In this document: piece after piece, positions 2 through 41,598 of the stretch
Layout of the letters: each line of letters begins with the position of its first letter
How positions within the stretch are numbered: position 1 is the stretch's first letter
Origin: Macrostomum lignano
Taxonomy: Eukaryota
DNA: 64,000 nt
Assembly (NCBI GenBank): GCA_002269645.1
Contig: NIVC01000620.1
Location: 444,979-508,978, forward strand
Direction: 5' to 3'
Notes under the pieces: model-generated
Database searches by the model: none
The model's input: the letters and a program-made list of their open reading frames with translations, nothing else
What the model was told of the DNA's origin: nothing
Made by a program: the position numbers and the translations under genes

Positions 2-5299
<5,298 letters not shown>

Positions 5300-9138: not shown

Positions 9139-12100
9139 ATGAGCTCATGCTCAGACTGGAGAAATATTCGACTGGCAGCCTTGCTTCTAGCACTGCTGGG
9201 TTGCGTCGTGTTTACTGCCTCTGTGGCTGGATTCAACTACAGGTGGCATGCGAGTAACACGGATGAAGATGGGAGTCTGCACAACTCAGCTTTCGGTGGC
9301 CAAAGTGAGTTAATTGCATCTGGTGCTTTGTATGGGTTTGAATGTGGCTCGATAGGAGTACATGTCTAACAAGTGCATGTAGGGGTGTCCGTGTCTAACG
9401 GGTAGGGGTGTCCGTGTCTTACAGGTAGGGGTGTCCGTGTCTAACAGGTAGGGGTGTCCATGTCTAACAGGTAGGGCCTGTCCGTGTCTAACAGGTAGGG
9501 CCTGTCCGTGTCTAACAGGTAGGGCCTGTCCGTGTCTAACGGGTAGGGGTGTCCGTGTCTAACGGGTAGGGGTGTCCGTGTCTAACAGGTAGGGGTGTCC
9601 GTGTCTTACAGGTAGGGGTGTCCGTGTCTTACAGGTAGGGGTGTCCGTGTCTAACAGGTAGGGCCTGTCCGTGTCTAACAGGTAGGGCCTGTCCGTGTCT
9701 AACAGGTAGGGCCTGTCCGTGTCTAACGGGTAGGGGTGTCCGTGTCTAACGGGTAGGGGTGTCCGTGTCTAACAGGTAGGGGTGTCCGTGTCTTACAGGT
9801 AGGGGTGTCCGTGTCTTACAGGTAGGGGTGTCCGTGTCTTACAGGTAGGGGTGTCCGTGTCTAACGAATGCGACTTTCAAGCAACCTGTAAAGCCATCCC
9901 AACTCGCCTGGGCTGCAGGTGAAACATCCGCGGTGCATCCGGGCAATGCAATCGCCGATCCCATGCAAGCCATCAACAGCTCCGAGAGCTGCACACCGCG
10001 CACTGTGGAGGCCTACCCGCCAGACCTGTTCACTTTGGCGCAGAAGCAGAGCGGCGCCATTCTCATTCACGCTTTTGTCTCGGCTTGGCTGTTTGTTGCT
10101 TTGGCGATCGTGTGCGACAATTATTTTTTGGCTTCACTGGAAGTTGTTTGTGAAAGTGAGTGCTGGCACAGGTGCTCAACTGGGTTGTCACAGGTGCTCA
10201 ACTGGGTTGTCACAGGTTCTCAACTGGGTTGTCACAGGTGCTCAACTGGGTTGTCACAGGTGCTCAACTGGGTTGTCACAGGTTCTCAACTGGGTTGTCA
10301 CAGGTGCTCAACTGGGTTGTCACATGTGCTCAACTGGGTTGTCACAGGTGCTCAACTGGGTTGTCACAGGTGCTCAACTGGGTTGTCACAGGTGCTCAAC
10401 TGGGTTGTCACAGGTGCTCAACTGGTTTGTCACAGGTTCTCAACTGGGTTGTCACAGGTGCTCAACTGGGTTGTCACAGGTGCTCAACTGGGTTGTCACA
10501 TGTTCTCAACTGGGTTGTCACATGTTCTCAACTGGGTTGTCACATGTTCTCAACTGGGTTGTCACAGGTGCTCAACTTGGGTGTTACAGGTGCTCAACTT
10601 GGGTGTTACAGGTGCTCAACTGGGGTGTTACTGGTGCTTAGGTACCTGTACCTGGATGTGCCTGCACCTGTCCAACCCTAACCTTGATCTTGTCAATCAC
10701 CTGCTATTTCGATCGCAGAGCTTCACCTGAAGCCGGACGTCGCCGGCGCCACCTTCATGGCTGCTGGCAGCTCAGCACCGGAGATGCTGGCTTCGGTCAT
10801 TGGCGTCTTCATCGCCCAGAGCGACGTCGGTGTGAGCACCATAGTGGGCAGCGCCATCTTCAACAACCTGATGATTGTCAGTCTGTGCGGCTTGGCCGCC
10901 ACCAGCGCTGTCTACCTGTCCTGGTGGCCGCTGTTTCGAGACTGCGGCTTCTACTGCATAAGTGTGGCCGCTATGATTGCTGTGATCTTCGACGGGATTG
11001 TCAACTGGTGAGCTTCATTTTCTTGCATTTTGTTTGTTTGAAAGACCTGCTGCTATTACAGTATGTGCCTGTCTGGCGATTAAAATGAATGGGAAGGGGC
11101 CATGGCGTTTCATTCACGATATACTCGTACCTTCCCTCCAGAAGCTGCGCCTTGAAACCAAAGAAACTACAGGTAGTTGCTAATAATAATATAAAAATAA
11201 TTGATTACACCTGCCCTAATAAGCAGATGTGCAACCGACAGCTCAGCCGCAGCTATTGCACGGCGCATCTGAAGGCTGCGTACGGCTGTTCAGTCCAAGG
11301 ACTGGGGGGGGAGTCGCCACACACACCCTCAATTTCCCCAGCTAATGCTGGCACCCATTCTACAGCTGGGTGAACTGAAGCAGTGCAGAGTTAAGGGTCA
11401 CGAATCAAGGACACAAATTCAAGTCGTGAGTTCGACGCTCTAACCACTAGGCTAAAACCTCTTCCACACTATTGTCACACTCTCCCTGTCACCCTCCTTG
11501 TCACACTCTCCTTGCCACACTCCTTGTCACATTCCCTGTCACACTCCTTGTCACACTCCCTCTCACACTCCTTGTCACACTCCCTGTCACACTCCTTGTC
11601 ACACTCCTTGTCACACTCCTTGTCACACTCCCTGTCACACTCCTTGTCACACTCCTTGTCACACTCCTTGTCACACTCCCTGTCACACTCCTTGTCATAC
11701 TCCCTGTCACACTCCTTGTCACACTCCCTGTCACACTCCTTGTCATACTCCCTGTCACACTCCTTGTCACACTCCCTGTCACACTCCTTGTCATACTCCC
11801 TGTCACACTCCTTGTCACACTCCCTGTCACACTCCTTGTCATACTCCCTGTCACACTCCTTGTCACACTCCCTGTCACACTCCTTGTCATACTCCCTGTC
11901 ACACTCCTTGTCATACTCCCTGTCACACTCCTTGTCACACTCCCTGTCACACTCCTTGTCATACTCCCTGTCACACTCCTTGTCACACTCCCTGTCACAC
12001 TCCTTGTCATACTCCCTGTCACACTCCTTGTCACACTCCCTGTCACACTCCTTGTCACACTCCCTGTCACACTCCTTGTCACACTCCCTGTCACACTCCT

Positions 12101-15100
12101 TGTCATACTCTCCCTGTCTTACTTGACTTACTTGACTCAGCTGCAGGGCTGTCCAGGGGGGACACAGCGGGAAGGCGCGAGCGCCCATTCCGCTAATCCC
12201 TGAACGGCCGACGCGTCGCTATGGACGAAGGGTTGGCGCCGCCCAGGGAGGTCCCCCAGTGTCGCCAGCAGCTATAGTGCTCTCTGGAACAGAGAGTTCA
12301 GCCCTGCGGGTGGCCTGGAGGTTGCGCATGAGCTGATTAAAGTTTTCGGGTACTCTCCCTGTCACTCTCCCCTTGTCACACTCCCTGTCACACTCTCCCA
12401 GTCCCAGTACACGCCCATCTAGGTGGTATTCCTAGATATGAGTATCCAGGAACAGGTTGTGGCCTGGCTAACTCAATACTACTGTTTGATTCTCGCAACC
12501 CATCAAGGTACGAGTCTGTCATCCAGCTAGCTCTATTCGCTCTATACATCGTGGTGATGGCCTTCAACAATCGAATCGACGCTGCAATCTCCAAGCGCTA
12601 TCCTCGGCTCGGCACGGGGGGCGCGCAGCGATTCTACGACCAGAGTAGACAGCAGACGGACGACTCAAGTCGGGTGATGGACGACGACGAGCTGGCTGAG
12701 ACGGTTGCCGGGCAGCAGCAACAGCAGCAAATTGAAATCTGGACGTTTGAGACTGGCGGCAGACCGCAGGTGCTCGCTGGCAGTCAAGACGATGAAGAGC
12801 TGGATGTGGTTTGTGAGTTTGAGTTGGTTTGTTCCTGGCCAAAATAGTGATGCTAGTATTTTTTGTACACAAGCCTCTAATGAATGTGGTTGCTTACGGA
12901 ATTGTAAAATGTCGGAATGAGTGACTTGGTTGTCTGTCTGACTCTCGACAATGTCATTTCTTGCGTTCAATCCCGTGAATGATCTAGTTACCTTGGATTT
13001 GTCCTTCTCCAAGGTGCTCAACTGGGTTGTCACAGGTGCTCAACTGGGTTGTCACAGGTGCTCAACTGGGTTGTCACAGGTGCTCAACTGGGTTGTCACA
13101 GGTGCTCAACTGGGTTGTCACAGGTGCTCAACTGGTTTGTCACAGGTGCTCAACTGGGTTGTCACAAGTGCTCAACTGGGTTGTCACAGGTGCTCAACTG
13201 TGTTGTCACAGGTGCTCAACTGGTTTGTCACAGGTGCTCAACTGGGTTGTCACAAGTGCTCAACTGGGTTGTCACAGGTGCTCAACTGGGTTGTCACATG
13301 TGCTCAACTGGGTTGTCACAAGTGCTCAACTGGGTTGTCACAAGTGCTCAACTGGGTTGTCACAGCTGCTCAACTGGTTTGTCACAGGTGCTCAACTGGG
13401 TTGTCACAAGTGCTCAACTGGGTTGTCACAAGTGCTCAACTGGGTTGTCACAGGTGCTCAACTGTGTTGTCACAGGTGCTCAACTGGGTTGTCACAGGTG
13501 CTCAACTGGGTTGTCACAGGTGCTCAACTGTGTTGTCACAGGTGCTCAACTGGGTTGTCACAGGTGCTCAACTGGGTTGTCACAGGTGCTCAACTTGGTT
13601 GTCACAGGTGCTCAACTGGGTTGTCACAGGTGCTCAACTGGGTTGTCACAGGTGCTCAACTGGGTGTTGTCCTTTTCGCATGTGACGGGGACCAACGTCC
13701 AATGTAGGTAGACGGCTGCTTTACACCCTGACTGAGTGCCTAAGTATCCGCCTGCGTGTCCGTGATCGGGGGTCACTACTTGACTCCTCGCTTGATGTGG
13801 GTGGGTCCAAGCTCGATTGAAAGCAACTGCCGCTAAAATTATCAATGCATATCAATGAAGATGTCGATCTGAAACCTCCATGCGCACGCACCCACCGACA
13901 GTAGTCAACCAAGGCCCCGAGTCGCCATTCCAACCGCCAGTCGGGCTGCTCCGACGGGTTTACTGGTTAATCGGGTTGCCATGGACAACGGCATTCTATT
14001 TAACCATACCAGACTGTCGGAAACCCGGCATCTGGCGCCGACTGTTTGTCCTCACCTTCCTAGCCAGCGTGCTGTGGGTCTCGGGCCTGATCTACATGCT
14101 GGTGTGGATGGTCTGTGCCGTAGGCGACGCCATGGGCATCCCGGACACTGTGATGGGGCTGACGCTTCTGTCTATTGGCACCTGCATTCCGGACGCTCTG
14201 GCTGGGATTTTTGTGACTAGAAGTGGTGAGTTTTTGTTAAAATAATCTAAGATTAAAAGTCGTAGAATTTCATTCGGGTCTTTTCTTCCTAAAACTATGT
14301 TGCACAAATTTCATTTGGTGTGGTGCCATCTAATTTGATGAGGTGCCATTTCATTTGGTGTGGTGCCATTTTATTTGATGAGGCGCCATTTCATTTGATT
14401 AACAAAAAATGAAACGATTGCTCATACTCTGTTTTGCACAAGACATTGAACTACAAACAGTTGAAATGTCTAAGATAAAATTGCGAAAATGGGTCTGGCA
14501 CAAAATTTGCGTCGAACTCCCAACTTAGGGCGACTTGGAGGACGACATATTAACAGCCTTCATTCCATCGAGCTTTAGAGGTTATTTGACCTTTTATGAC
14601 TGTTCGTAGTTGTTAACCATTGTCCTTGGTTTTTCTTCACTAGCTCAAACCATGACACCATGAATGCTAGGCCACTCTTGTGACATCTCGTGACGCAACC
14701 AGCTCTGAGGCAATTCTGCTGAGATACTCTCACACGGGGTGTACATTGGCGCTGACTTTCTAATCGTCAGGCATGTGCACTCTCTGTGCCCTAGGGGGGG
14801 GGTAGGCCCTGATGCATGTGAAGGAAATCTAAAATTCACCTACCGATTCGTGTGCAGGTCTGGCAGACATGGCCATCGCTAACAGCATCGCCAGCAACGT
14901 GTTCGACATCACGGCTTGCCTCGGCCTGCCCTGGTTCATCAGCACGGCCCTGCTGAACCCCGGCAGCACAGTCACCATCAGCTCCAGCGGTCTGACCTAC
15001 ACGGCTATCACTTTGCTGGTTACTATCGTGTTCCTTCTAGTAGCAACACATGCCAATCGAATGAGGGTAGATAAGAAATTAGGATTCATCTTCTTGTTTG

Positions 15101-15192
15101 TTTATGTTGCCATAGTGACCGCTGCGTGTTTGTACGAGACTAACGTTTTTGGATCGTTCAATCCGGAGCCCTGCCCAAGACAAAGAATTTAG
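9139..15192 (+). CDS. SLC24A: SLC24/NCKX-family Na+/Ca2+(-K+) exchanger, paralogue 1 (about 582 aa, 7 exons)
   Basis: Exons 9139-9304, 9919-10155, 10719-11007, 12508-12812, 13708-13800, 13902-14225, 14858-15192; all GT-AG, total 1749 nt in frame. N-terminal hydrophobic segment; alpha-1 GATFMAAGSSAPE...GSAIFN; alpha-2 GTCIPD...DMAIANSIASNVFDI...LGLPW; C-terminal YETNVFG...CPR. The small exon 13708-13800 is the least certain. Confidence 0.92.
9375..9863. repeat. 23/24-bp minisatellite (ggtaggggtgtccgtgtctaaca) in NCKX-1 intron 1
   Basis: Tandem array with ggggtg/gggcctg variants. Confidence 0.9.
10165..10640. repeat. 22-bp minisatellite (acaggtgctcaactgggttgtc) in NCKX-1 intron 2
   Basis: Tandem array; same unit as 13012-13665. 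Confidence 0.92.
11300..11454 (-). mobile_element. Degenerate tRNA-derived SINE fragment with a CORE-like central block
   Basis: Minus strand reads TAGCCTAGTGGTTAGAGCG (A-box-like) ... TGTGTCCTTG ... CTTAACTCTGCACTGCTTCAGTTCACCCAGCTGTAGAATGGGTGCCAGC, resembling the invertebrate CORE-type SINE consensus as recalled; B box not seen. Confidence 0.5.
11468..12115. repeat. 12-bp minisatellite tgtcacactcc(c/t) with higher-order variants, NCKX-1 intron 3
   Basis: Tandem array; small residue at about 12352-12400. Confidence 0.92.
13012..13665. repeat. 22-bp minisatellite (acaggtgctcaactgggttgtc) in NCKX-1 intron 4
   Basis: Same unit as the intron-2 array. Confidence 0.92.
14308..14473. mobile_element. 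Short copy of a dispersed element: about 5 units of a 20-bp repeat plus a unique 3' flank of about 75 bp
   Basis: atttcatttgatgaggtgcc units followed by attaacaaaaaatgaaacgattgctcatactctgttttgcacaagacattgaa...tgtctaag, a flank shared with 17030-17105. Confidence 0.6.
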
Positions 15193-15750: not shown

Positions 15751-15859
15751 ATGGGCAGTATCTGTTCTTTGATAAAGTGCAAGTTCCTAACTTGCTGCTT
15801 TTGCATAGGATTGCAAAGGATTCCGTCTTGAAGTTTTTATCGTTAAAGAAATCCCACCA

Positions 15860-17105
15860 TTTCATTTTAGAGGCGCCATTCATTCATTTGATGAGGTGCC
15901 ATTTCATTTAATGTGGTGCCATTTTATTTGATTTGGTGCCATTTCATTTGGTGAGGCGCCATTTCATTTGATGAGGTGCCATTCCATTTGATGAGGTGCC
16001 ATTTCATTTGATGAGGTGCCATTTCATTTGATGAGGTGCCATTTCATTTGATGAGGTGCCATTTCATTTGATGAGGCACCATTTCATTTGATGAGGTGCC
16101 ATTTCATTTGATGAGGTGCCATTTCATTTGATGAGGTGCCATTCCATTTGATGAGGCACCATTTCATTTGATGAGGTGCCATTTCATTTGATGAGGCACC
16201 ATTTCATTTGATGAGGTGCCATTTCATTTGATGAGGTGCCATTTCATTTGATGAGGTGCCATTCCATTTGATGAGGCACCATTTCATTTGATGAAGTGCC
16301 ATTCCATTTGATGAGGCACCATTTCATTTAATGAGGTGCCATTTCATTTGATGAGGTGCCATTTCATTTGATGAGGTGCCATTCCATTTGATGAGGCACC
16401 ATTTCATTTGATGAGGTGCCATTCCATTTGATGAGGCACCATTTCATTTAATGAGGTGCCATTTCATTTAATGAGGTGCCATTTCATTTGATGAGGTGCC
16501 ATTTCATTTGATGAGGTACCATTTCATTTGATGAGGTGCCATTTCATTTGATGTAGTACCATTTCATTTGATGTGGTGCCATTTTATTTGATTTGGTGCC
16601 ATTTCATTTGGTGAGGCGCCATTTCATTTGATGAGGTGCCATCTAATTTGATGAGGTGCCATTTCATTTGATGAGGTGCCATCTAATTTGATGAGGTGCC
16701 ATTTCATTTGATGAGGTGCCATCTAATTTGATGAGGTGCCATTTCATTTGATGAGGTGCCATCTAATTTGATGAGGTGCCATTTCATTTGATGAGGTGCC
16801 ATCTAATTTGATGAGGTGCCATTTCATTTGATGAGGTGCCATCTAATTTGATGAGGTGCCATTTCATTTGATGAGGCGCCATCTAATTTGATGAGGTGCC
16901 ATTTCATTTGATGAGGTGCCATCTAATTTGATGAGGTGCCATTTCATTTGATGAGGTGCCATCTAATTTGATGAGGTGCCATTTCATTTGATGAGGCGCC
17001 ATTCCATTTCATGAGGCGCCATTCCATTTGATTAACAAAAATTAAACGATTGCTCATACTCTGTTTTGCACAAGACATTGAATTACAAACAGTTAAAATG
17101 TCTAA
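15860..17105. repeat. 20-bp satellite (atttcatttgatgaggtgcc), about 1.15 kb, with the same 3' flank as 14398-14473
   Basis: Tandem array; the right part alternates tttca/tcta variants as a 40-bp dimer. Confidence 0.92.
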
Positions 17106-17406
17106 GCACCAGCTTAAGTTATTAGTCAAATACAAACGAAGCCCCTACCCTCTATCAAATCAATTCGATATCTTCTTCAGTGTTTCAAGCTTGTATAAGC
17201 CAGCCAAATATTCGGTTAATTGACTCAGAAACCGGATCTCCTCAGTTTTATTTAACCAGGCTTAACGGCTGGGAAACCATGTGCCAGTTGAAATCTAATA
17301 CACACCTTGTCAACATCCTACTGAATATAAATCTACCAAAAAGTGTCGATTTTCGAATCGTCTCTAATTCTCGTCCATTGACAGATCCTTGAAAGTTCCA
17401 TGGAAA

Positions 17407-18188
17407 ATGGTTTGTACTTTTGTTTTCGCATTCTTGCTGTTGCACAGCTCAACTGCCATAAAGCTCATCGGTGTTACCTACATCGGTTGCTTCAAGGACG
17501 AATTTAGGAGTAGCAGAGACCTGGATGGTCTAAGAGGACTGCTTTCGGTTGATAAATACCCAGTGCGCACTTTTGGTGCAGTGACGACGGAAAAAAATTC
17601 GCCAAAGTTTTGCACTCAAATCTGCTCAAGCATCGGATTCAAGTTTTTCGGATTGCAGAATACAGACGAGTGTTTCTGTGGAAACTACTTTGGGAGATAT
17701 GGGCGGGAGCCGCAGCACAAGTGTAATCACAGATGTCCGGGCAATGCGACCGAAATCTGCGGCGGTAATCTTCGAAATTCCGTGTACCGCTTGAGCTATC
17801 AATTCGGTGAGTTTCCTATTCTGAAGCTTCTGGGTCACTAGTCGCCCCGAAGGCTTCCTATAAAAGAATGTATGCGTACCTTTTAACGTGTCGAATATGA
17901 TCCAAACCTACAAAAACTTTGACAGAATCTACAGGCATCAATCAGTTTGTTAAGCAACTCGACAACCGTGTCGATGAGCCGAAAAAACTTTTGTCCGAAG
18001 ACCTGCTGCTACTTGCCGAGCGAACTGTCAGTGCTCATCGCCTGCTGCAGTGTGCCGCTAAGTGCTCAATTGTTGGCTGTCAAGTTGTAGTTTTTTCTGA
18101 GAAACAACGACGTTGCGGACTGTTTTGGAATGTTCAGGTTGTTAAAGATCGACGTTTGGTTGATTTAGAAGTCTTTGTTCGTGGCTAA
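17407..18188 (+). CDS. Secreted WSC-domain plus C-terminal PAN/Apple-like protein, copy 1 (about 217 aa)
   Basis: Exons 17407-17806 and 17935-18188, phase-1 intron. Signal peptide MVCTFVFAFLLLHSSTA; WSC motifs YIGCFKD...CTQIC...FFGLQNTDECFCGN...CNHRCPGNATEICGGNLRNSVY; C-terminal LLQCAAKC...CQVVVF...C. Confidence 0.85.
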
Positions 18189-18867
18189 AGACTAACTGAA
18201 ACCTGCAATCGTTCCCTGGGAGTGTTAATTTAGCAAGCATTTACTGGTATACTAGCTGCTATTCAAAATATTCGCATTGCATCATGTGAAGTATTTCACC
18301 CATGGAGAAATAAATATATCTCGATTCCCAGCAGTTTGAAATGAGTTGAGAAGAAAGTTGCAAAATATTGACGTTTTTAAGCTCTTTGAGACAGAAATTC
18401 ACGAAGCTTTTAATTTTTTTTCACGGTTGCACCTACCTAGATTCTCTATACATTACCTGTATGGCATACATCAGTGAGTTTCTTGTAAAAGCCCGCAAAC
18501 ATCAGCAGCATCCCCCATATACTTTTGGCAGTAAAAATTTGCTTGACTTCAAAGTTTCGATCGATTCAGCCTAAACTGAGCGACAAAATTCAGTCGATAT
18601 TGGTGTGTGGACTCAGCAATGAAACTGTATTCCTTGCGTAGAAAACTTTTAGGATCTTTTTCTAACTTCCTTTTCGACATCCTTTTGTATGCCAATCGAA
18701 GGAAGCTGTGACTACGGTGCAACACCTAGTAAATAGTGAGAATATGGATAAACAGACGCATTGCGACAGATTTGGGCGAGTTTGAAAGGGAAGGCATATC
18801 AAAATACTAGCTGTATGCAGAGTTTCTTCTCAAGCTGGTATTCAGTTTAATCGTCCCAGAGTTAGGC

Positions 18868-19576
18868 ATGCTTCGCCATCTCTTTTTCTTGCTTTTTTGT
18901 CAATGCTTAGCCGCTAAGAAGCTCACTGGTTTCGACTACATCGGCTGTTTCAAAGACAAAGACAACCGCGACATGCCAGGACTCGAAGGCATGCCTCCAA
19001 TTGAGGGCCACAGCGTTGTCGGTACCTCAATTAGTAATGCCACCCAGAACTCGCACGAATTCTGCAGCCATATTTGCTCTCTGTTCAACTTTCGCTACTT
19101 TGCTGTACAGTTTGGCAAGCAGTGCTTCTGCGACAACTCCTATGGAGGAATGGGAGCAGGTCTGGAGAGCGAATGTAGCTTTGGTTGTCCTGGCAATTCG
19201 AACCAGAAATGCGGAGGATTTGATCGAAACTCTGTTTTCAAGCTGAACTATGCTAGTGAGTAAAGCATTTCTGCATTGATACACTTTTGATACACTTTCT
19301 AAAGATCCTAACCATTGCATTACAGACGTGGACGAATATTTTCAAGGGCAGATTAATCGCAACTCGACTCTGAGCTACGTTACGAGCCCTGACGCACCTG
19401 CCGATCGTACTTTTATCGCTCGAAGTTTGCTGCAGTGCGCCTCGAAATGCTCTTCGACTGCTGGTTGCCAAGCGGTAATTTTCACCAAGCAAAGAAAGCT
19501 GTGCCGCCTGCTTGGAGCTGCGGAAGGTCTGCCTACATTGGTTGGAACCGACGAACTGGTGTTTATTCGTGGCTGA
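18868..19576 (+). CDS. Secreted WSC-domain plus PAN/Apple-like protein, copy 2 (about 212 aa)
   Basis: Exons 18868-19255 and 19326-19576; signal peptide; YIGCFKD...CSHIC...YFAVQFGKQCFCDN...CPGNSNQKCGGFDRNSVF; LLQCASKC...CQAVIF...C; same intron position as copy 1. Confidence 0.85.
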
Positions 19577-20181: not shown

Positions 20182-21304
20182 ATGTCACTAAAATGTCAAA
20201 AATTTACTCGGCGAGACAGAACTTTTACCACTTTACTTTTGGCTGCATGGCTGTTCGGCATGGCCCTGTATGGGCTGGCCTACAAAACGGCGACTGCAGG
20301 TGAGTCAAAACTTGTCCTTTTTCAAGGAGATCTCAACTTGAGCACCAGCACGAAGTAAAGCTCAGATTTTGTGCTGCTAGTGGACTTAGGAGTTTGAAGT
20401 TTAAAGCAACCAATAATTTTCGATATGTGCAGATTTCTGGATGTTTGACAGAGATTTTGTTAGAACTTTAGAATCCATTCTAGAGTTTTAAGTTGGTATA
20501 AAATCCCCATTTTGAGCCTAGGAATGCAGGAGCCTTGATTTTCGGCTTTTTCGGGTCAAATTAGTCCGACAAGTTGTCGATTGAACATCTGTTGCAATTC
20601 TAAATAAAATATTCGATTATCTCTTGTTGATTAATATTTGAAAATATCGGTCTCGTGTTGCAATGAAGGCGGAATTCTACATGTAAATGTCAGCTATACA
20701 TTCAGAGGCAGAATGTGCTTTTTATGTTAAAAAAATCCAGCTCATAGGTGTTAAATGCTTCCTTCGCCTTTGCAAGCAATTCTTATCTAAACCGAGTCAT
20801 TTTTATAAGTTCAGAATGTAAACAGCATTAAATAGCTCTGCCTTTAATAGCAGCTGATGCCTCAAGGTACGGTAGAATGCTAGATTACAGGTGTAAATGT
20901 ACATTACTGTCTACAGCACAAGAGAAGAAAGAATCAATTAAACTGGATTGACAGTAGTCTAGGTGATGTCGGTAACTTGAAAAGGTTTTCCACCAACCAT
21001 GACTACCATTTGATCTTCCACCAGGTTTAACGTCCCAAGGTGACAATCCGTCCGACTTTAACTTTGGAACCAGTGTCGATGAAAGCAGTTCGCACCTGCG
21101 ACACCTACTGTTTGTTCATGTTCACAGCAATTGTACGCCTCGATCAGTGGAGACTTACCCACCTGACCTGTTCACTCTGGAGCAGAAACAGCACGGAGCA
21201 ATTATTATTCATATTGCAGTTGCCGTGTGGCTGTTTGCCGCTTTGGCTGTGATCTGCAATGACTACTTTCTGGCTTCAATGGAGGTGCTTTGCGATGGTA
21301 AGTG

Positions 21305-21348
<44 letters not shown>

Positions 21349-21385
21349 GCTACTACTACTACTACTGCTACTACTACTACTACTG

Positions 21386-21447
<62 letters not shown>

Positions 21448-21490
21448 GCTACTACTACTACTACTACTGCTACTACTACTACTACTACTG

Positions 21491-21568
<78 letters not shown>

Positions 21569-21569
21569 T

Positions 21570-21619
<50 letters not shown>

Positions 21620-21630
21620 TTACTACAACA

Positions 21631-21703
<73 letters not shown>

Positions 21704-21706
21704 TTG

Positions 21707-21747
<41 letters not shown>

Positions 21748-21750
21748 GCG

Positions 21751-21814
<64 letters not shown>

Positions 21815-21815
21815 T

Positions 21816-21881
<66 letters not shown>

Positions 21882-21908
21882 CACTACTACTACTACTACT
21901 ACTACTAT

Positions 21909-21995
<87 letters not shown>

Positions 21996-24900
21996 CACTA
22001 CTTATGTACTTTGTAACACTTTCAGTTCTGCACCTGAAGCCGGACGTCGCAGGCGCCACCTTCATGGCCGGCAGCAGCTCAGCTCCGGAGCTGCTCACCT
22101 CAATAATCGGCGTGTTCTTCGCCGAGAGCGACGTCGGTGTGAGCACGATCGTTGGCAGCGCCGTGTTCAACATCCTCATGATTGTGAGCATGTGCGGCCT
22201 GTTGTCCTCCAGGCTGGTCTGCCTGTCCTGGTGGCCGCTATTCAGAGACTGCAGCTTCTACTGCGTCAGCGTTGTCGCGTTGGTCGCGGTCATCTACGAC
22301 GGTTTGGTGACTTGGTGAGCGGTTGTCACTCTGTTAAGCCATTGTATTAGCTGAGAATGTAGAACCAGGTAAGCGAGGTCTCAAGGTATAAGAATTTTTT
22401 ATTCCTTATAAGTCGCAGCAACTAAAATCGTTAAAAATAATAACGAATCACCTCTAAAAGGCACAGGGTAGAGTGTTCAGGTTGAAAAGCTACGTGACCA
22501 ATTAGATAGAATCAAGGACAACTTAAGTAGAAGGACGCAACACTCAAAATATACGAGTATATGGTAAATGTTTTGAAGGCAACTTTTCGCCGAAAAATAC
22601 ACTACAGAGATAGGAGATTTTTTAATTTTTTCAGCACAAAAGTTGTTATTGCTTTTGATAAGAGAAAGACTCAGTGCTCATCTTTTGATATGTTGTGCCT
22701 TCCTTATTGCTCTATTGAAATTCATAAAGCTTCTTGTTCAGAAAATTAGGATTTCGAGTTTAGCGTCCTATATATATGTTACTTAAGTAGTCCTTTGGAT
22801 AGAATACGATAGAAAACTCAAGGATGAAGGCGCAACCCAGGGGGGCCGTAGCCCAGCGGTAGCGCAGCTGCTCTGGTGTGCCAGCGACCCAGGCTCGATT
22901 CCAAGTGCAGTCACATTAATTTTGGGCTGAATTGGAATCTCGGCTTGGCTCTGCTCGTGCAATTAACGGCCTTGAGAGCCAACCCCTCAAGGCGCAGTGA
23001 TGTGTACATGCCCTGTACACTTGAAATAAAGTTAGGGCCGCTGTACACTCCTGTGTGAGTGTGTGCCTGCGTACGTATCCGCGCGCTTGTGTGCCTGCTC
23101 AGGGGAGTCGGCGGAATGGGCAGTAATGCCTCTCGCCGGTTGTGTGCCCATGTCGCTTAAAGTGCGCCAGGGTACCCCCCTGCCTCTAATAATAAAAAAG
23201 GCGCAACCCAACTTACACGCAGACTTTACACTACTAAGTCAGTAGTATCATTCATATAAGTCTACAGACTACACTTTGTGTTACTGTAGTTTTCAGTAGT
23301 TTTCAGTTCCTTTGTAATTGTCTAAGAAACCAAGTTTCCCATCCTTCCACTTCAATTTAATGTCAATTTAATTCTATTGTAAACTTCAGGTTCGAGTCCG
23401 TAATCCTGGTAGGCATGTACATCATGTACATAGTGTTGATGTTCTTCAATGATCGCCTGGACAGCGCAATATCAAGCCGGTATCCCAGCCTGGGCACCGG
23501 GGCAGCCTACAAGCTCTATGGAAAAACTGACGCCATCGACAATGAGAGGGAGGTGTTGCTCAGCCAGTCTGGCGAATCGCCGAGAGGATATGCCAGCATT
23601 GACTTGCCTCTGGTTTCAGTCACTGGTAAATGCAAACATTTTTATGTGACCAGATATAGAGCATTAGCTAATGTCTGCGGGCCAGGTGAGGAGAGGAGAG
23701 AGGATAGGAGATGAGATATGAGATGAGAGTAGAGGTAAAAGAGAGAGAATATATGAAGAAGAGGAGAGAGAAGGGGGGAAAGGGAGAAAAATAGAAAAGG
23801 GAGAGGATCGAGAGAAGGGGGAGAGAGGATCGAGAGAAGGGGGAGAGAGGATCGAGAGAAGGGGGAGAGAGGATCGAGAGAAGGGGGAGAGAGGATCGAG
23901 AGAAGGGGAGAAAGGATCGAGAGAAGAGGGTTGAGAGAGGATCGAGAGAAGAGGGTTGAGAGAGGATCGAGAGAAGAGGGGGGAGAGAGGATCGAGAGAA
24001 GAGGGGGATAGAGGATCGAGAGTAGAGGGGCAGAGAGGATTGAGAGAAGAGGGGAGAGAGAGGATCGAGAGAAGAGGGGGAGAGAGGATCGAGAGAAGAG
24101 GGGGAGAGAGGATCAAGAGAAGAGGGGGAGAGAGGATCGAGAGAAGAGGGGGAGAGAGGATCGAGAGAAGAGGGGGAGAGAGGATCGAGAGAAGAGGGGG
24201 AGAGAAGATCGAGAGAAGAGGGGGGATCGAGACAAGAGGGGGAGAGAGGATCAAGAGAAGAGGGGAGAGAGGATCGAGAGAAGAGGGGAGAGAGGATCAA
24301 GAGAAGAGGGGGAGAGAGGATCGAGAGAAGAGGGGGAGAGAGGATCGAGAGAAGAGGGGGAGAGAGGATCGAGAGAAGAGTGGGAGAGAGGATCAAGAGA
24401 AGAGGGGGAGAGAGGATCGAGAGAAGAGGGGGAGAGAGGATCGAGAGAAGAGGGGGGAGAGAGGATCGAGAGAAGAGGGGGAGAGAGGATCGAGAGAAGA
24501 GTGGGAGAGAGGATCGAGAGAAGAGGGGGGAGAGAGGATCGAGAGAAGAGGGGGAGAGAGGATCGAGAGAAGAGGGGGAGAGAGGATCGAGAGAAAAGGG
24601 GGAGAGAGGATCGAGAGAAGAGGGGGAGAGAGGATCGAGAGAAGAGCTGGGAGAAAATAGGTAATAAAATTGAGAAGAGATCCTGGATTGCTATTGCGAA
24701 TTTGAAGTTAATAACTACGGGGGTATTTTTGATAAAAGTCCCTCATTCAGAGACGGAAACTTTCTTTCTTTACATTCGTCAAAGCCCCAGAAGACCAGGG
24801 TCCAGAGTCGCCATTTCTGATGCCTCAGGGCTTTCTCCGCCGAACCAGCTGGATCTGCATGCTGCCGTGGACCTGCGCATTCTTTGTCAGCATTCCCGAC

Positions 24901-26102
24901 TGTCGAAGACCGGGCATTTGGAGGCGCCTGTTCCCGCTGACTCTGGTCTCTAGCGTGGCCTGGATATCCGGGATAAGCTATCTCATGGTGTGGATGGTCT
25001 GCGCTGCGGGCGACGCACTGGGCATCCCGGACACAGTGATGGGGCTCACTCTGCTGGCCGCCGGCACCTCTGTGCCTGACTGCATGGCCGCTGTCTTTGT
25101 CTCTAAAGGAGGTGTGCAAAAACTTTTGATTGGAGAGTGGGGCTACTACGAGTATTACGAATAGCTATAGACACAAACACACACACACAAGCACACACAC
25201 TGTCCCTTGAAGGCTGGGACTCTGAGCAGATATTATTTAACTTCAAACTTAAACCAATTTGCGTGCAAAAAGCCCTATAGGATACTGCATCTGCAACTGG
25301 GAGGTATCTACAAAACCCATTAAACAATGAGACAGTTTGTGACTAGACATGCCAATGCTTTGACCCCCCGCGCCCCAGATTGTGACTCGTTGTGGAAATC
25401 AATATTTATGCTTCAGGGCGCCAAAATATAGCGCTATCGGCACCAAAATGAATCTCAAAATAAATGCTTGCCTGCGGCGCCAAAATGAGTGCCTGTCATT
25501 TCGTGCCTGTCTGTGGCGCCAAAGTGAGTGCCTGCGGCGCCAAAATGAGTGCCTGCGGCACTAAAAGAATGCCAAATGCTTTGATTCCCAAAACGTTGTA
25601 GAGTTTTTTATTTTGTCCCCCCATATAAAAAATCCATGCCGACATCCCGGTTGGCCAGAATGCAGAGGTGTAGCAAAGGAATTCCAGGGCTTTTCGAGGA
25701 AGTTCAGTCGCCCAACGAACAACGATGCAAATCAATAAATATTGAAACTTCTCGTTCAACTTTGCAGGACTGGGCGATATGGCGGTATGCAACAGCATTG
25801 GCAGCAATGTGTTCAACATCCTCATCTGCTTAGGCCTGCCCTGGTTAATCAGCACCGTCATTATCGAGCCTGGAAGCTCAGTTATCATCAATTCGTCTGG
25901 TCTAACGTATTCTTCCATCACCCTGTTCTCCACAATAGTATTCCTGTTCATCATTGTCTATTATAACAAAATGCAATTGAACTTTCGTCTGGGACTTACC
26001 TGCCTCATTGTTTACCTAGTAGTGACGACATTGTCGTGCTTGTACGAGACTAACGTGTTTGGACCATTGAATCCGCCGCCGTGTCCCAGGACGCGGATGT
26101 GA
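20182..26102 (+). CDS. SLC24A: SLC24/NCKX-family exchanger, paralogue 2 (about 525 aa, 6 exons)
   Basis: Exons 20182-20299 (start ATG uncertain), 21025-21297, 22026-22314, 23390-23625, 24785-25111, 25768-26102; total 1578 nt in frame. alpha-1 GATFMAGSSSAPE...GSAVFN; alpha-2 AAGTSVPD...GLGDMAVCNSIGSNVFNI...LGLPW. Exon 3 (289 nt) and the last exon (335 nt) match paralogue 1 in length. Confidence 0.92.
21305..22000. repeat. (CTA)n trinucleotide microsatellite in NCKX-2 intron 2
   Basis: Lies between donor gtaagt (21298) and acceptor ttcag (22025); the poly-Y/T/L/S/V ORFs are artefacts. Confidence 0.95.
22840..23197 (+). mobile_element. Full-length tRNA-derived SINE (about 358 bp) with a 13-bp target-site duplication
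   Basis: Head GGGGGGCCGTAGCCCAGCGGTAG (A-box-like) and GGCTCGATTCC (B-box-like); tail ctaataataaaa; TSD aaggcgcaaccca at 22827-22839 and 23198-23210; two more copies in the window. Confidence 0.88.
23690..24650. repeat. Polypurine 22-to-24-bp minisatellite (gatcgagagaagagggggagagag) in NCKX-2 intron 4
   Basis: Period 22 near 23830 and 24 near 24135; almost entirely purine. Confidence 0.92.
25417..25562. repeat. Short degenerate repeat of about 20 bp (gcggcgccaaaatgagtgcct) in NCKX-2 intron 5
   Basis: About 5 imperfect units. Confidence 0.6.
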
Positions 26103-27479
26103 AATATTCAACTTCCATAGCTTTTTCAAGTATAGTCTCAATGTTTTTCCTAATTGCTTGGGGAGTAAGATTTTGAATATTTGGAAGAGCTTAACAGTTC
26201 GTTATGAAATACATTATTAATTTTCATAATATCTATTTTTTATATTCCATTGAAGTACCTTGATGAGTCATTTAATTCAACTACAAATTTAATTTAAAAT
26301 GTTCTTTTTGTCCTTTCAAAAGACGCAACATTCATTCACTTCAGATAAAAGTGCTTATTTACCCATATAGTGCGGCACACTGCCTGATTTGCCTCACTAC
26401 TTCAAAAGTCCATATTTACTATTCAAAAAGCCGCCAATATTGCCCCATTCAGTGCAACTTCCGGCTCTGGAGACTTTAGAAATTTTTCTAAGGAATGGCT
26501 AAGGTGGTTAGATGGCATGGACTACCACTCTGCAAAGGGCTTCTATTTTATACGCTTTTATTCATAAAATCTTAGAACTTTTATAGAGTTGTCAACTGAG
26601 CAATTTTTAGGTCTCTTGCGTCAAACAATATAGATGGACTGTCCTTCTGAATTTTCTGTAGACCCCAACTCGTCCCTAAATCTTCACTCTCTCTCGGCAT
26701 GCTCTCCAGTCCTGAGCTTGACACATCTCTTCTCAAAGCTTGTAAATAAGCAAACTTCGAGCACGCATGAGTCCTTAGACGCTCACTTTTCTGCCAGAGT
26801 AATCAGACAGCTGTACTTGGCCTTTTTCATTTTCTTACTAAAACTTGGGGTCTCCTTATGATCTCTCTCTCCCTTTCTGTGCTCTCATTTGGAGCAGAAA
26901 AGAAGTGACTGACTACAGGCTTGCTGCTCGGGCAGGAAATAGCAGCAAGGAGAGGGAGGGAGGGAGAGAGCGTGTGTGCCAGATTGTGTGCACCGCTCGT
27001 TGCCATAGCAACAGCGGAGAGGTGCGCGCATGCAGGCTCTCAGCACAGCAGCAAGCAGTTTTAGATATGATTAAAGACTTTCGTGTCTCTTCTGGTCTGT
27101 GAGCGAGACCGCACTGAAATTCAATTGGCACTACTGGGTCTTCACACTGTATAGCCCAGTGTTCCATGCTCATTCTCTCACTGGCTGCTCACTGGCACAC
27201 ATCAACCCCACCCAGCTGGGGGCCCCGATTCCATTTGCTCTTTTTTTGCCTCAGCTATTCGTTTTGTGCAAGCAGAGCATGAGCACAAAGCATTAGAACT
27301 CTCTGTTGATTCTGGAGAGAGTTTTCTTCACAAAGAAAAGACGCCCCTAAGTGAATATATATATGATGCGCTGCTTGTAAAAATAGCCATCAAAACTGGA
27401 GAGAGAGAGCATCGACTGCACTAAAACAGACAACGGCCGAAACTGAAAGAAACTTCCGATAGCAGCTGAAAAGTTTGAA

Positions 27480-29338
27480 ATGAAGCGGAACATTGAACGG
27501 ACGGCGACTCCGCCAGACAGACAAGCGACATACGAAGCCGACCGGGTCGCTGAAGATGACAGCACTCAGCAGCAGCAGGAGCAGCAAGCAAAGAATCCAG
27601 GAGCTGTACAAAGACCGCGAACCGCCCTTGAGGTTGCTCGGTCCAGCGGCATGTTCAAGGACTACTTAGCTGGATTAGACAACCTCCGCTCGATAGTAAA
27701 CGATTGCGAGAACCGTCTCGCCCAGGCTTTGAACGAGTTCTACGGCACAACGGAAAAAGACGAGCAGATGTTCAACGCATTTAACATCGAGGTCAACAAA
27801 GCGTTCGAAGCGTGCAACTCCTGCCTGGACAAGGCCGGCCATCAGGCTATCATTGTTGATGGCCAAGCCCCGATTGCTACGCTGGTGAACAAGCTGAAGG
27901 AATACCGATTGGCCGCTAATCCGGAGGACACTCAACTGCTGCTACAGTTTTGGGAGTCGTTCAAGCTGGCTCTGGAGCAGCTGCAGACCATCGCGGATGA
28001 CTACGAGCGTCGAGTGCTGTCAAAACTGCGCACAGGGTGCCTGATTGCCTCGAGCGGCGCAATGGCGACCGCCAAATCGCCGCTGTCGAAGGCCTACGAA
28101 GCCGAGGCCGCCGCCTACTCCAAGGAGCTGGAGACCGTCCGCACGAGAGTCCGACTGCTCTGCCACAGCGCCGGCACCCACATGCGAATGGAGCTGCTAG
28201 GCAAAGCCTCTCACACCGAGAGAGTCCTCATCAACTGTAACGACGACTTCTATCCGATCCTGTGCGTAGTGCCTGACCTGACGGTCAAGCTGGAGTCCAT
28301 GGCCCGCATCGCCTACCAGTGGCTGGACAAAGACGAGACCTACTTGTTTGAGGTGTCCCGCCAACTGCGCGATAAACGAAGCGAAACACGCGAGATGGAA
28401 CAGCAACTCAGAGCTGAGCGCGAGAAACACCGACTGCTACTGAAGTCAGTGAAGTCAGCTTACCTGATGTGTCAAAACAGCAAGAAGAGACTTCGAGAAA
28501 TCACGCAAGAGCTGAAAAACCTCGAGGAGCATATTGAGCACTCGGCTCGGGAACGGCGGGCCAAGATGGACGAGAAAAAGCAGAAGAAGGAGATGGCCGA
28601 CTTTTTAGACTTGAGCATCACTCAGACTAAAATGAATTACGCGCTCCAGGTGAGTTCTTTCGTTGATTAGACAGATGCTTTGATCGTGCTAACGAAGTGA
28701 AGTCAAATGCGGGTAAAAACAGACCACAATTACTTTTAACTTTTTTGGGTAGCGTATTGGCTGGCTATCCAGATCCCTATGCCACACGAGCTGGTAATCA
28801 AAGTGATGTACTCTAATACTCTGTATGCACATACTCCATCAGACAAAGTGTTATTTCTTACTGATGATATTTTTCGTAATTTTCATTGATAAACAAGTTT
28901 GTTGCACTCGTAATGGGCTAAAACATCCCATTTCCCATCTACCAGCTCAAACGCCAGCGTCTGATGGCCCAGATTCAGGAACTGGAGGAGTTCCTGCGCA
29001 AAGTTGAGCAGGAAATCAGCTCGCTCAAGACCCAGATTCAAACAAAGACTAATGAGAGAAAGTCTGCCGAAGACCTGTACCAAGCGCAGGACAGCAACTT
29101 CGCGAATATGAAGACCGACTTAGAAGGCTACACTAAAAAAGTACAAGAGATGAGCAACGAACTCCGCGGCGTCCGCCAGCATCTCAGTCATCTGGAGAGC
29201 ATCCAGAGCCTCAAAACCAGTCCGGAGACTGTGGACACTTTCTACGAAAGGCCTCGCAGCGTGAAGCTGGCGCCGTCGCTCATGGAGTCGATCAACATGA
29301 AAAAACGACGTCTCCTGAAGCAGTCAGTTAAAAGTTGA
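27480..29338 (+). CDS. Uncharacterised helical/coiled-coil protein (about 520 aa, 2 exons)
   Basis: Exons 27480-28649 (donor gtgagt) and 28946-29338, phase 0; E/K/Q/L-rich heptad-like C-terminal half; no family recognised. Confidence 0.75.
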
Positions 29339-40399: not shown

Positions 40400-41598
40400 A
40401 GAACATCCCATCTCCGTAAAAGACTCTCCGCTGCCGCTCTGACCGCTCTGACTTTGTCAAATCTGCCGCTGATTCTCTGCTGCTGCATCGCTCTCGGCCA
40501 CTCGCTCGAATTCGGCCACTTGAGCTGCTTTGTGGACGAAGAAACTCCAAACCGAGACCTCACCGGTCTTGTTGGCTTATCCATTGTCGGACCTTACTCG
40601 AAGACACCGGAGGAGGGGGACGTCGCACTTTATGGCAGCTTGACTTTAGAAGTTTGCACGAAATCTGCACGTATGGAAAATTCCGGTACTTTTCCGTTCA
40701 GTATTCAGGTGCTTGCTTCTGCGGAAACTCGTACGGCAGATTCGGCAGGGCAGCCGACAGCGACTGCAACATGGCCTGCGCTGGCAACTCCGCCCAAATC
40801 TGTGGAGGGACGTCGCGAAACTCTGTGTACCCGCAGGTCTACAATCGTTCAGGTGAGCGTAACGGAATTGCAATCGATGCGGTTCTACTTCTACACGTAC
40901 ATGTACTTTTCCAGCTGCACTGGGCACAGCATCCATGGTTTAGCACGCGTTTGCTTCAGCATTAAATATTAAGATTTCAAAGCATTTCACAAAGTCAAAC
41001 TAGATTTCTGATCCAACACAGATAAACAAATATAATTAATTTTCCGTAGGGCTCCGGGCACGCTATTAGAACGCTGTCAAAAAATGGTTTCACAACCAAA
41101 GGTTTTGTCAATCTTCAGCCCGTTCTGCTGATTTCTGGGCACGTATAAGAGCACGGATAACTGTACGAACTCATACATGTACACTCTCTGTGCCTTGGGA
41201 TTTAGCACTCCTAGGTGTGAGCGCGCAACGAACACTGAGCCAATTTTTCAAAAGAAAATATACAGCCAGAGTTTGAATGCAGTTTCAGCATGTGACTGAC
41301 TACAGTCGACATGTCGAAGGTCTCACAAGAGTAGCGGTGCACCACTCAATGTCTTTTTTTCCTTTCAGATAGCAAGCATTTCATTTTGGCTGACCGAGAC
41401 TACGTGAACCTGACCTCTACCAGCGGCCCGTTCTACCGCACCGAGCAGCCCGTCAGGAGTTTGACTGAGTACGTATATCGCTGCGTCACAGACTGCCAGG
41501 CCGTGCTGTTCCACCTGGACGCCTGCCACCTGCTGAGATTCGCCGTTCTGCCACACGAGCTGAAGAACGTCGCTGGGATGTTCGTCACCCGCGTGTGA
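40400..41598 (+). pseudogene. WSC plus PAN/Apple-like gene, copy 3, with a 1-nt frameshift at about 40657 (pseudogene or assembly error); start codon not found
   Basis: ...LILCCCIALGHSLEFGHLSCFVDEETPNRDLTGLVG...LTLEVC continues in another frame as HEICTYGKFRYFSVQYSGACFCGNSY...CAGNSAQICGGTSRNSVY; donor at 40853; exon 41369-41598; same intron phase as copies 1 and 2. Confidence 0.7.

What the first reader, a model, noticed from the sequence alone, without database searches (positions are those of the whole stretch)
25779..25850. NCKX-2 naturally has Asn at the residue that confers K+ dependence
Seen: paralogue 1 reads SNVFDI (GAC at 14905-14907) and paralogue 2 reads GSNVFNI (AAC at 25815-25817). 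Known: the equivalent Asp (D575 in NCKX2) is required for K+ dependence, its Asn mutant is K+-independent, and NCX proteins have Asn there. Inference: a tandem pair of one K+-dependent and one K+-independent exchanger on the SLC24 scaffold, implying different stoichiometry and driving force.
Basis: partly seen in the sequence, partly recalled or inferred. Interest (0 to 1): 0.72.

Follow-up and report, generated by a model that had tools for sequence, protein, structure and literature searches.

The report
Flatworm NCKX exchanger lacking its K+-site aspartate
One of two neighbouring sodium/calcium/potassium-exchanger genes in the flatworm Macrostomum lignano naturally carries, under strong purifying selection, the single Asp-to-Asn change that makes human NCKX2 potassium-independent in the laboratory, so it is probably a natural potassium-independent exchanger, though this has not been tested.

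Summary
The window is the last 64 kb of Macrostomum lignano contig NIVC01000620.1. It holds two tandem six-exon SLC24 (NCKX3/4/5-like) genes on the + strand.

- **P1** (9139-15192) is identical to PAA79702.1 and has GAC (Asp) at 14905-14907.
- **P2** (20182-26102, 525 aa) has AAC (Asn431) at 25815-25817.
- **Equivalence:** Asn431 aligns without gaps to NCX_Mj Asp240, which the literature equates with NCKX2 Asp575.
- **Not an error or pseudogene:** AAC is present in all three copies of the locus in the assembly, and Asn is present in a gene model from an older assembly. One copy is publicly annotated from RNA-seq with exactly my exon model (PAA75855.1). dN/dS between copies is 0.08-0.12 (p = 2e-9).
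- **Rarity:** Asp occupies this column in about 98% of close homologues. Asn is derived on the P2 branch and arose independently in Haliotis, Branchiostoma and at least one other lineage.
- **Rest of the site:** P2 keeps the other 11 of 12 cation-site residues.

P1 is not a canonical control, because it carries Cys at the Ser545 position, a change that abolishes transport in human NCKX2. K+-independence of P2 is a well-founded but untested prediction.

The parts
20182..20299 (+). P2 exon 1 (ATG; N-terminal signal/TM0 segment)
   Evidence: Gene model. The start coincides with the annotated start of the homeologous copy (L002 20355). The product equals PAA75855.1 in architecture.
21025..21297 (+). 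P2 exon 2 (TM1; contains the fixed D118N change)
   Evidence: AG/GT junctions, phase 1. D118N is fixed in all three copies.
22026..22314 (+). P2 exon 3 (alpha-1 repeat, TM2-3; Glu152 = NCKX2 Glu188)
22070..22075 (+). Codons Gly146-Ser147 (AGSSSAPE instead of the family's AAGSSAPE; NCKX2 Ala182/Gly183 positions)
   Evidence: The Gly column is 100% conserved and the Ala column 95% conserved among homologues. Both changes are fixed in all three P2 copies. A182C is non-functional in NCKX2.
23390..23625 (+). P2 exon 4 (TM5 and short cytosolic loop)
   Evidence: The GA-rich repeat at 23801-24654 is intronic.
24785..25111 (+). P2 exon 5 (TM6-7, first half of alpha-2 repeat; GTSVPD, Asp404 = NCKX2 Asp548)
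25768..26102 (+). P2 exon 6 (TM8-10; second half of alpha-2 repeat; stop codon)
   Evidence: It is 98.8-99.4% identical to the two other copies.
25815..25817 (+). AAC = Asn431, the equivalent of NCKX2 Asp575 / NCX_Mj Asp240
   Evidence: with the literature equivalence.
25788..25790 (+). TGC = Cys422, a change private to the window copy (other copies AGC = Ser, the family consensus)
9139..15192 (+). P1 gene (exons 9139-9304, 9919-10155, 10719-11007, 12508-12812, 13902-14225, 14858-15192); 551 aa, identical to PAA79702.1
14905..14907 (+). GAC = P1 Asp457, the NCKX2 Asp575 equivalent
14183..14185 (+). P1 Cys427 codon (GTCIPD), at the position of invariant NCKX2 Ser545
   Evidence: S545C is non-functional in NCKX2.
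27480..29335 (+). Downstream coiled-coil gene (PAA79703.1, Mlig023664g2; exons 27480-28652 and 28943-29335). It shares its transcript-cluster name with the annotated P2 copy.
   Evidence: Naming rule is from PMC5730564.

Best explanation
P2 is a functional, transcribed SLC24-type cation/Ca2+ exchanger of Macrostomum lignano. It arose by an old tandem duplication with P1. After the duplication, a single G-to-A change turned the aspartate of the central 'Smid'/K+ site (NCKX2 Asp575) into asparagine. The other eleven cation-coordinating residues stayed at the family consensus. The site therefore has the Asn/Asn configuration of eukaryotic NCX. P2 is predicted to exchange Na+ for Ca2+ without co-transporting K+, probably 3 Na+ : 1 Ca2+. 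That would give a smaller driving force for Ca2+ extrusion than the 4 Na+ : 1 Ca2+ + 1 K+ cycle.

**Shown:** the sequence, the positional equivalence, gene integrity, purifying selection, transcript-based annotation, and the derived and recurrent nature of the Asn.

**Inferred:** K+-independence and stoichiometry.
For: - **Codon and gene model:**
- **Family:** two Na_Ca_ex domains, E = 3e-50. Best hits are NCKX3/4/5-like proteins.
- **Equivalence:** the ungapped alignment puts Asn431 on NCX_Mj Asp240 and Asp404 on Glu213. PMC5749117 equates Asp240 with NCKX2 Asp575 and reports that D575N is K+-independent with exchange retained. PMC4232491 says the same.
- **K+-independent relatives:** NCX1 and NCLX have Asn at this position.
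- **Site residues:** 11 of 12 are at the consensus.
- **Independent copies:** three genomic copies are all AAC, with intact ORFs and GT-AG introns.
- **Selection:** dN/dS is 0.084-0.116, with 22 synonymous against 6 non-synonymous differences, binomial p = 2e-9.
- **Expression:** the public RNA-seq-derived annotation has the identical 525-aa model with Asn, PAA75855.1.
- **Fold:** the AlphaFold2 model has pLDDT 84.9 and pTM 0.83, and it matches only CaCA exchangers.
- **Polarity:** P1 and P2 are sisters (96%) inside a Macrostomum clade whose other members are all Asp, so Asn is derived.
- **Recurrence:** independent Asn lineages retain the rest of the site. These are Haliotis (two species, alpha repeats identical at 83% overall identity), Branchiostoma and P0316.
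Against: - No transport measurement exists for P2 or for any natural Asn variant.
- The D575N result comes from human NCKX2, a different SLC24 branch that is only distantly related to P2 outside the alpha repeats.
- NCX_Mj has Asp at this position yet is K+-independent. The residue is therefore necessary in NCKX2 but is not a universal predictor.
- P2 also carries fixed changes at other highly conserved positions: A182G and G183S equivalents, D118N and S408A. Their effect is unknown and could compensate or alter function in other ways.
- P2 is among the more divergent family members, with 7 of 93 near-invariant columns changed against a median of 1.
- Expression evidence is indirect. It rests on an annotation on one of three copies, and I could not inspect reads.
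Confidence: 0.55

Rival explanations
1. P2 is a working exchanger that is still K+-dependent or K+-modulated. Other residues, for example the remodelled alpha-1 segment AGSSSAPE or backbone carbonyls, would supply the K+ site in this sequence context.
For: - P2 has fixed, lineage-specific changes next to the site: A146G, G147S and S408A.
- Many NCKX2 residues besides Asp575 shift the K+ Km (PMC12150658 introduction).
- The predictive value of this one residue is imperfect, because NCX_Mj has Asp yet is K+-independent.
Against: - In NCKX2 the single D575N change was sufficient to remove K+ dependence.
- All characterised K+-independent animal relatives in the PDB alignments carry Asn here.
- None of the P2-specific changes introduces a new acidic or carbonyl-rich side chain near the site.
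Confidence: 0.2
2. P2 has a different job. It could be an exchanger with altered cation selectivity (for example Li+ or H+ coupled, as in NCLX or CAX relatives), or a poorly transporting or non-transporting paralogue retained for another role.
For: - Both tandem genes are unusually divergent at near-invariant columns, P1 at 11/93 and P2 at 7/93.
- P1 carries a substitution that kills NCKX2, S545C. The pair as a whole may therefore have left canonical NCKX function.
- P2 has lost two conserved acidic residues, D118N and D431N.
Against: - P2 retains Glu152 and Asp404 and all Ser/Thr/Asn ligands.
- Strong purifying selection acts across the whole coding sequence.
- The fold is confidently predicted.
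- NCLX-type motifs such as GNSIGD are absent.
Confidence: 0.2
3. The Asn is an artefact (sequencing or assembly error), or P2 is a decaying pseudogene.
For: - P2 is not annotated on the window's own contig.
- No identical protein was returned by the homology searches.
Against: - AAC is present in three separate contigs that differ at 2-4 positions within exon 6 and 24-28 across the CDS.
- Asn is present in an independent older assembly.
- The ORFs are intact and the splice sites canonical in all copies.
- dN/dS is about 0.1.
- The annotation gap is explained. P2 and the downstream gene share one transcriptional unit that received one CDS. The 90% cluster is represented by a 103-aa fragment.
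Confidence: 0.02

Closest known systems
Vertebrate and invertebrate NCKX3/4/5-type K+-dependent Na+/Ca2+ exchangers (SLC24A3-5; Drosophila CG1090-like)
   Same: - Two Na_Ca_ex domains and a short N-terminal segment with a predicted leader helix.
- 45-60% identity to these proteins.
[quoted passage not shown]
- 11 of 12 site residues match.
   Different: - Asn instead of the about 98%-conserved Asp at the K+-dependence position.
- AGSSSAPE instead of AAGSSAPE in the alpha-1 repeat.
- A very short cytosolic loop.
Human NCKX2 D575N laboratory mutant (Kang et al. 2005, J Biol Chem 280:6834, as cited in PMC5749117 and PMC4232491)
   Same: The same residue change at the same structural position on an SLC24 scaffold.
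   Different: P2 is a natural, selected sequence of another SLC24 branch and has additional fixed substitutions. Its transport has never been measured.
Eukaryotic NCX (SLC8) and NCLX (SLC8B1)
   Same: Asn at the Asp240-equivalent position, giving an Asn/Asn Smid configuration. They share the CaCA 10-TM fold.
   Different: - Only distant sequence similarity (E about 1e-13 to 1e-16, against 1e-195 for NCKX-like proteins).
- No Calx-beta regulatory domains.
- No NCLX-type GNSIGD motif.
Natural Asn variants in Haliotis (P0070, P0075), Branchiostoma lanceolatum (P0197) and representative P0316
   Same: SLC24-like proteins with Asn at the same column and the remaining site residues largely intact.
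   Different: - They have independent origins.
- Haliotis additionally has P187A and A541S equivalents, and Branchiostoma has A541S.
- None has been characterised, as far as the searchable literature shows.

Membership tests
SLC24 / NCKX (K+-dependent Na+/Ca2+ exchangers) | [quoted passage not shown] | tested here: met
   Pfam E = 3.1e-50 with two stretches. Alpha repeats are aligned.
SLC24 / NCKX (K+-dependent Na+/Ca2+ exchangers) | Closest sequence relatives and phylogenetic position within SLC24 | tested here: met
   All top hits are NCKX3/4/5-like or CG1090-like. P2 nests in a flatworm clade of that branch.
SLC24 / NCKX (K+-dependent Na+/Ca2+ exchangers) | Central acidic pair Glu188 / Asp548 and the Ser/Thr/Asn ligands of the four cation sites | tested here: met
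   P2 has A,S,S,E,S,N / A,T,S,D,S, which equals the consensus.
SLC24 / NCKX (K+-dependent Na+/Ca2+ exchangers) | Asp at the Asp575 position (determinant of K+ dependence) | tested here: not met
   Asn431, codon AAC, in all copies.
SLC24 / NCKX (K+-dependent Na+/Ca2+ exchangers) | Obligatory K+ co-transport, 4 Na+ : 1 Ca2+ + 1 K+ | not testable with these tools
   This requires flux or electrophysiological assays.
SLC8 / NCX | Asn at the NCX_Mj Asp240-equivalent position | tested here: met
   P2 Asn431 aligns with the NCX1 Asn in GSNAVNVF.
SLC8 / NCX | Large cytosolic loop with two Calx-beta (CBD) domains, and closest sequence similarity to NCX | tested here: not met
   The only Pfam family found is Na_Ca_ex. 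The loop is about 70 residues. The E-value to NCX1 is only about 4e-13.
SLC8B1 / NCLX (CCX) | CCX-type alpha repeats (for example GNSIGD) and closest similarity to NCLX | tested here: not met
   P2 has GTSVPD. The E-value to NCLX is 4e-16, against 1e-195 to NCKX-like proteins.
CaCA superfamily fold | 10-TM inverted-repeat exchanger fold | tested here: met
   The AF2 model has pLDDT 84.9. The top 31 Foldseek hits are all CaCA exchangers: NCLX, NCX_Mj, VCX1, NCX1, CAX and YfkE.

The most novel reading that the evidence does not exclude
Animals have repeatedly converted K+-dependent SLC24 exchangers into K+-independent, NCX-like exchangers by the same single Asp-to-Asn change. This happened in Macrostomum, Haliotis, Branchiostoma and at least one more lineage. 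In M. lignano the change sits in a tandem pair whose two members have both remodelled the ion pocket, P1 with S545C/A541S and P2 with D575N plus the A182G/G183S equivalents. That would give two exchangers with different stoichiometry, Ca2+ floor and voltage dependence from one ancestral NCKX gene.
Probability: 0.4. Interest if true: 0.62.

Novelty: new variant of a known kind. Interest (0 to 1): 0.5.

Why it matters
K+ co-transport is the property that defines SLC24 and sets how low these exchangers can drive cytosolic Ca2+. One calculation for cone photoreceptors gives about 0.04 nM for an NCKX against about 50 nM for a K+-independent exchanger under the same gradients (PMC2151608).

The only evidence that one residue controls this coupling is a laboratory mutant of human NCKX2. 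Natural, selectively maintained Asn variants would show that evolution uses the same switch. They would supply ready-made proteins for testing how K+ coupling is built into the CaCA fold; no NCKX structure is in the PDB copy searched. They would also warn against annotating every SLC24 homologue as a 'sodium/potassium/calcium exchanger'.

M. lignano is transgenic- and RNAi-tractable, so the physiological role could be tested.

Tried and rejected
- **Exact look-ups.** Look-ups of its last-exon ORF and of the window's P2 itself found nothing.
- **Homology searches.** Searches with full-length P2 and with its C-terminal half returned nothing above about 60% identity. This first suggested an unannotated or unexpressed gene. 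The cause turned out to be technical. The 90% cluster holding the annotated copy is represented by a 103-aa N-terminal fragment. On two of three contigs the shared transcriptional unit was given the downstream gene's CDS instead.
- **Reaching the third copy.** Fetching it by flanking P1 fell short of exon 6. This was solved by guessing the annotated protein from exon combinations and then fetching it.
- **Repeat ORFs in P2 intron 4.** The long stop-free Glu/Arg-rich ORFs (23722-24950) were considered as a possible coding loop and rejected. They are a 24-bp tandem repeat, they are out of frame with exon 5, and they are absent from the annotated 525-aa product.
- **Literature.** The primary D575N paper is not held. 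Text searches for 'D575N', for natural Asn variants, and for the gene ids Mlig023664 and Mlig021664 found nothing.
- **Rejected explanations.** Sequencing error and pseudogene were considered and rejected.
- **P1 as a reference.** Treating P1 as a canonical K+-dependent reference was considered and rejected.

Full report
**What is in the sequence.** The window is eukaryotic DNA. Between 9.1 and 26.1 kb on the + strand lie two genes with the same six-exon structure. All internal junctions are GT-AG and the intron phases are identical.
- P1 (exons 9139-9304, 9919-10155, 10719-11007, 12508-12812, 13902-14225, 14858-15192) encodes 551 aa.
- P2 (exons 20182-20299, 21025-21297, 22026-22314, 23390-23625, 24785-25111, 25768-26102) encodes 525 aa.
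- The two proteins are 58% identical.
- Each has two Pfam Na_Ca_ex domains.
They lie in ...IASNVFDITACLGLPW and ...IGSNVFNILICLGLPW.

**Source organism.** P1 is 551/551 identical to Macrostomum lignano PAA79702.1 (BOX15_Mlig021664g2). The window is the last 64 kb of contig NIVC01000620.1 of assembly GCA_002269645.1. Both proteins belong to the NCKX3/4/5-like branch of SLC24, with best non-flatworm hits at 45-52% identity.

**Is the Asn at the K+-dependence position?**
- An ungapped HMMER alignment of the P2 alpha-2 region to NCX_Mj places Asp404 on Glu213, Thr400/Ser401 on Thr209/Ser210, and Asn431 on Asp240.
- PMC5749117 states that NCKX2 Asp575 is equivalent to NCX_Mj Asp240, and that the Asn substitution makes NCKX2 K+-independent while Na+/Ca2+ antiport remains. 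PMC4232491 describes the same residue as the conserved alpha-2 aspartate conferring potassium dependence.
- The spacing between Asp404 and Asn431 is 27 residues, the same as between Asp548 and Asp575.
- Human NCX1 and NCLX align an Asn with P2 Asn431.
The primary paper itself is not held.

**Is it real, and is the gene alive?** M. lignano DV1 has large duplicated genome blocks (PMC5730564). The whole locus (flippase, P1, P2, coiled-coil gene) is present three times in the assembly.
- I extracted P2 from the other two contigs (L004 and L005). Both have intact 525-codon ORFs, canonical splice sites and AAC at codon 431.
- The window and L004 copies differ at 28 coding positions, 22 synonymous and 6 non-synonymous. 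This gives dN/dS = 0.084 and binomial p = 2e-9 against neutrality. The two comparisons with the third copy, run on exons 1-5, give 0.10-0.12. P1 copies give 0.11-0.18.
- A chimeric UniProt model from the older assembly (A0A1I8IMX5) also contains GSNVFNIL.
- The copy on NIVC01000859.1 is publicly annotated as PAA75855.1 (BOX15_Mlig023664g3, 525 aa). It matches my exon model exactly and carries Asn.
- That annotation was built from RNA-seq-derived transcriptional units (StringTie/TACO/TBONE/TransDecoder), with name prefixes shared by transcripts that are at least 95% identical. It therefore counts as transcript evidence.
- It also explains why P2 is unannotated in the window. On the other two contigs the unit named Mlig023664 was assigned the downstream 520-aa coiled-coil ORF instead. 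The protein accession numbers of P1 and that gene are consecutive.
- Sequencing error and pseudogene are excluded.

**How unusual is Asn here?**

| Set | Asp | Asn | Other |
|---|---|---|---|
| First alignment: 120 best full-length homologues plus P1 and P2 (122 rows) | 119 | 3 (P2 and two Haliotis paralogues) | – |
| Second alignment: 120 shorter hits plus the C-terminal halves of P1 and P2 (122 rows) | 120 | 2 (P2 and one Branchiostoma lanceolatum protein) | – |
| Third alignment: 146 new representatives at 50% clustering plus P1 and P2 (148 rows) | 133 | 5 (P2, three representatives, one misaligned row) | Glu 6, Ile 1, gap 3 |

- A neighbour-joining tree puts P1 and P2 as sisters (96% bootstrap) inside a Macrostomum-specific clade (100%) whose other members all have Asp. 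The Haliotis Asn genes sit among gastropod sequences.
- Asn is therefore derived in P2 and has arisen independently several times.
- The two Haliotis orthologues are 83% identical overall but identical across both alpha repeats, including Asn. This suggests the state is maintained there too.

**The rest of the ion pocket.** I used the twelve site positions described for NCKX2 and NCX_Mj (PMC12150658).
- P2 equals the family consensus at eleven positions and differs only at Asp575.
- P2 also has lineage-specific changes fixed in all three copies at highly conserved non-ligand positions. These are A146G and G147S (AGSSSAPE, the NCKX2 Ala182/Gly183 positions), D118N and S408A. S422C is private to the window copy.
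- P1 keeps the Asp but has Ser at the Ala541 position and Cys at the invariant Ser545 position in all copies.
- In human NCKX2, S545C and A182C have <1% of wild-type transport.
- P1 deviates at 11 and P2 at 7 of 93 near-invariant columns, against a median of 1.
- Both members of the pair have thus remodelled pockets, so P1 cannot be assumed to be a standard K+-dependent exchanger.

**Structure.** An AlphaFold2 model of P2 is confident, with mean pLDDT 84.9, pTM 0.83 and the membrane core above 90. It matches only CaCA exchangers in the PDB: NCLX, NCX_Mj, VCX1, NCX1, CAX and YfkE. The PDB copy holds no NCKX structure.

**Interpretation.** The best-supported reading is that P2 is a working exchanger whose Smid/K+ site has the Asn/Asn configuration of eukaryotic NCX, and that it is therefore K+-independent. 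If so, it would have a lower thermodynamic capacity to lower Ca2+ than a 4Na:1Ca+1K exchanger. PMC2151608 calculates 0.04 nM against 50 nM under one set of gradients.

This last step is inference. It transfers a mutant phenotype from NCKX2 to a distant family member that carries additional substitutions. NCX_Mj shows that Asp at this site does not by itself impose K+ coupling. The alternatives are retained K+ dependence through compensating changes, or altered or absent transport. The decisive test is a flux assay with and without K+, together with the N431D revertant.

**Novelty.** The protein sequence is public as a 'hypothetical protein'. The Asp575 rule is established. I found no paper describing natural Asn variants within SLC24. 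The nematode survey only notes three proteins with atypical alpha-2 repeats. I therefore rate it a new variant of a known kind, of moderate interest. The finding is solid at the sequence level and the hypothesis is directly testable. It is not surprising in mechanism.

Noticed in passing
window 14183-14185 (P1 codon 427) and 14171-14173 (codon 423): P1, the paralogue that keeps Asp, has Cys at the invariant Ser545 position and Ser at the Ala541 position (LSIGTCIPD) in all three genomic copies and in the older assembly. S545C abolishes transport in human NCKX2, yet P1 is under purifying selection (dN/dS 0.11-0.18).
   Followed up: partly
window 20182-29335: P2 is unannotated on this contig. P2 (525 aa) and the downstream coiled-coil gene (520 aa; 27480-28652 and 28943-29335) share the transcript-cluster name Mlig023664. 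They are apparently one transcriptional unit with two ORFs, and the annotation kept a different one on different contigs. This could be an operon or trans-spliced precursor, or read-through transcription.
   Followed up: partly
window 25788-25790: The window copy alone has TGC (Cys422) where the other two copies have AGC (Ser, 95% conserved in the family). This is nine residues before Asn431, in TM8.
   Followed up: yes
window 17368-18185 and 18811-19573; also 40420-40962: Two unannotated tandem ORF pairs lie between P1 and P2. Each pair has a WSC-domain ORF (Pfam 1.7e-16 and 3.2e-14) followed by a second ORF. The second ORF of the second pair (19280-19573) has a PAN domain (7.6e-7); the first pair's second ORF has no Pfam hit. 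A third WSC ORF lies further downstream.
   Followed up: partly
UniProt A0A1I8IMX5 (P0394), maps to window ~9990-41000: This 1506-aa 'WSC domain-containing protein' model from the older assembly is a chimera. It joins P1 exons 2-3, P2 exons 4-6, the coiled-coil gene and later ORFs. UniProt A0A1I8I270 (103 aa, named 'Transmembrane protein 107') is just the N-terminus of P2.
   Followed up: yes
window 9379-9865, 10167-10638, 11465-12110, 13012-13665, 15857-17032, 21305-22002, 23801-24654: The introns of both genes are packed with long minisatellites.
- The same 22-bp unit (CACAGGTGCTCAACTGGGTTGT) fills P1 introns 2 and 4.
- (CTA)x233 fills P2 intron 2.
- A 24-bp GA-rich array in P2 intron 4 creates about 1-kb stop-free Glu/Arg-rich pseudo-ORFs in several frames.

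Array lengths probably account for much of the size differences between the three locus copies.
   Followed up: partly
P0252, P0284, P0291, P0317, P0356, P0384 (representative proteins): Six of the 146 diverse SLC24-like representatives have Glu at the Asp575 column with the rest of the site mostly intact. This is a second natural variant class at the K+-site residue.
   Followed up: no
window 50635-54330 (+) and 825-1511 (+): There is a 1232-aa uninterrupted ORF with multiple ankyrin repeats. The C-terminal exon of a P4-ATPase phospholipid flippase lies at the left end of the window; that gene sits upstream of P1 in all three locus copies.
   Followed up: no
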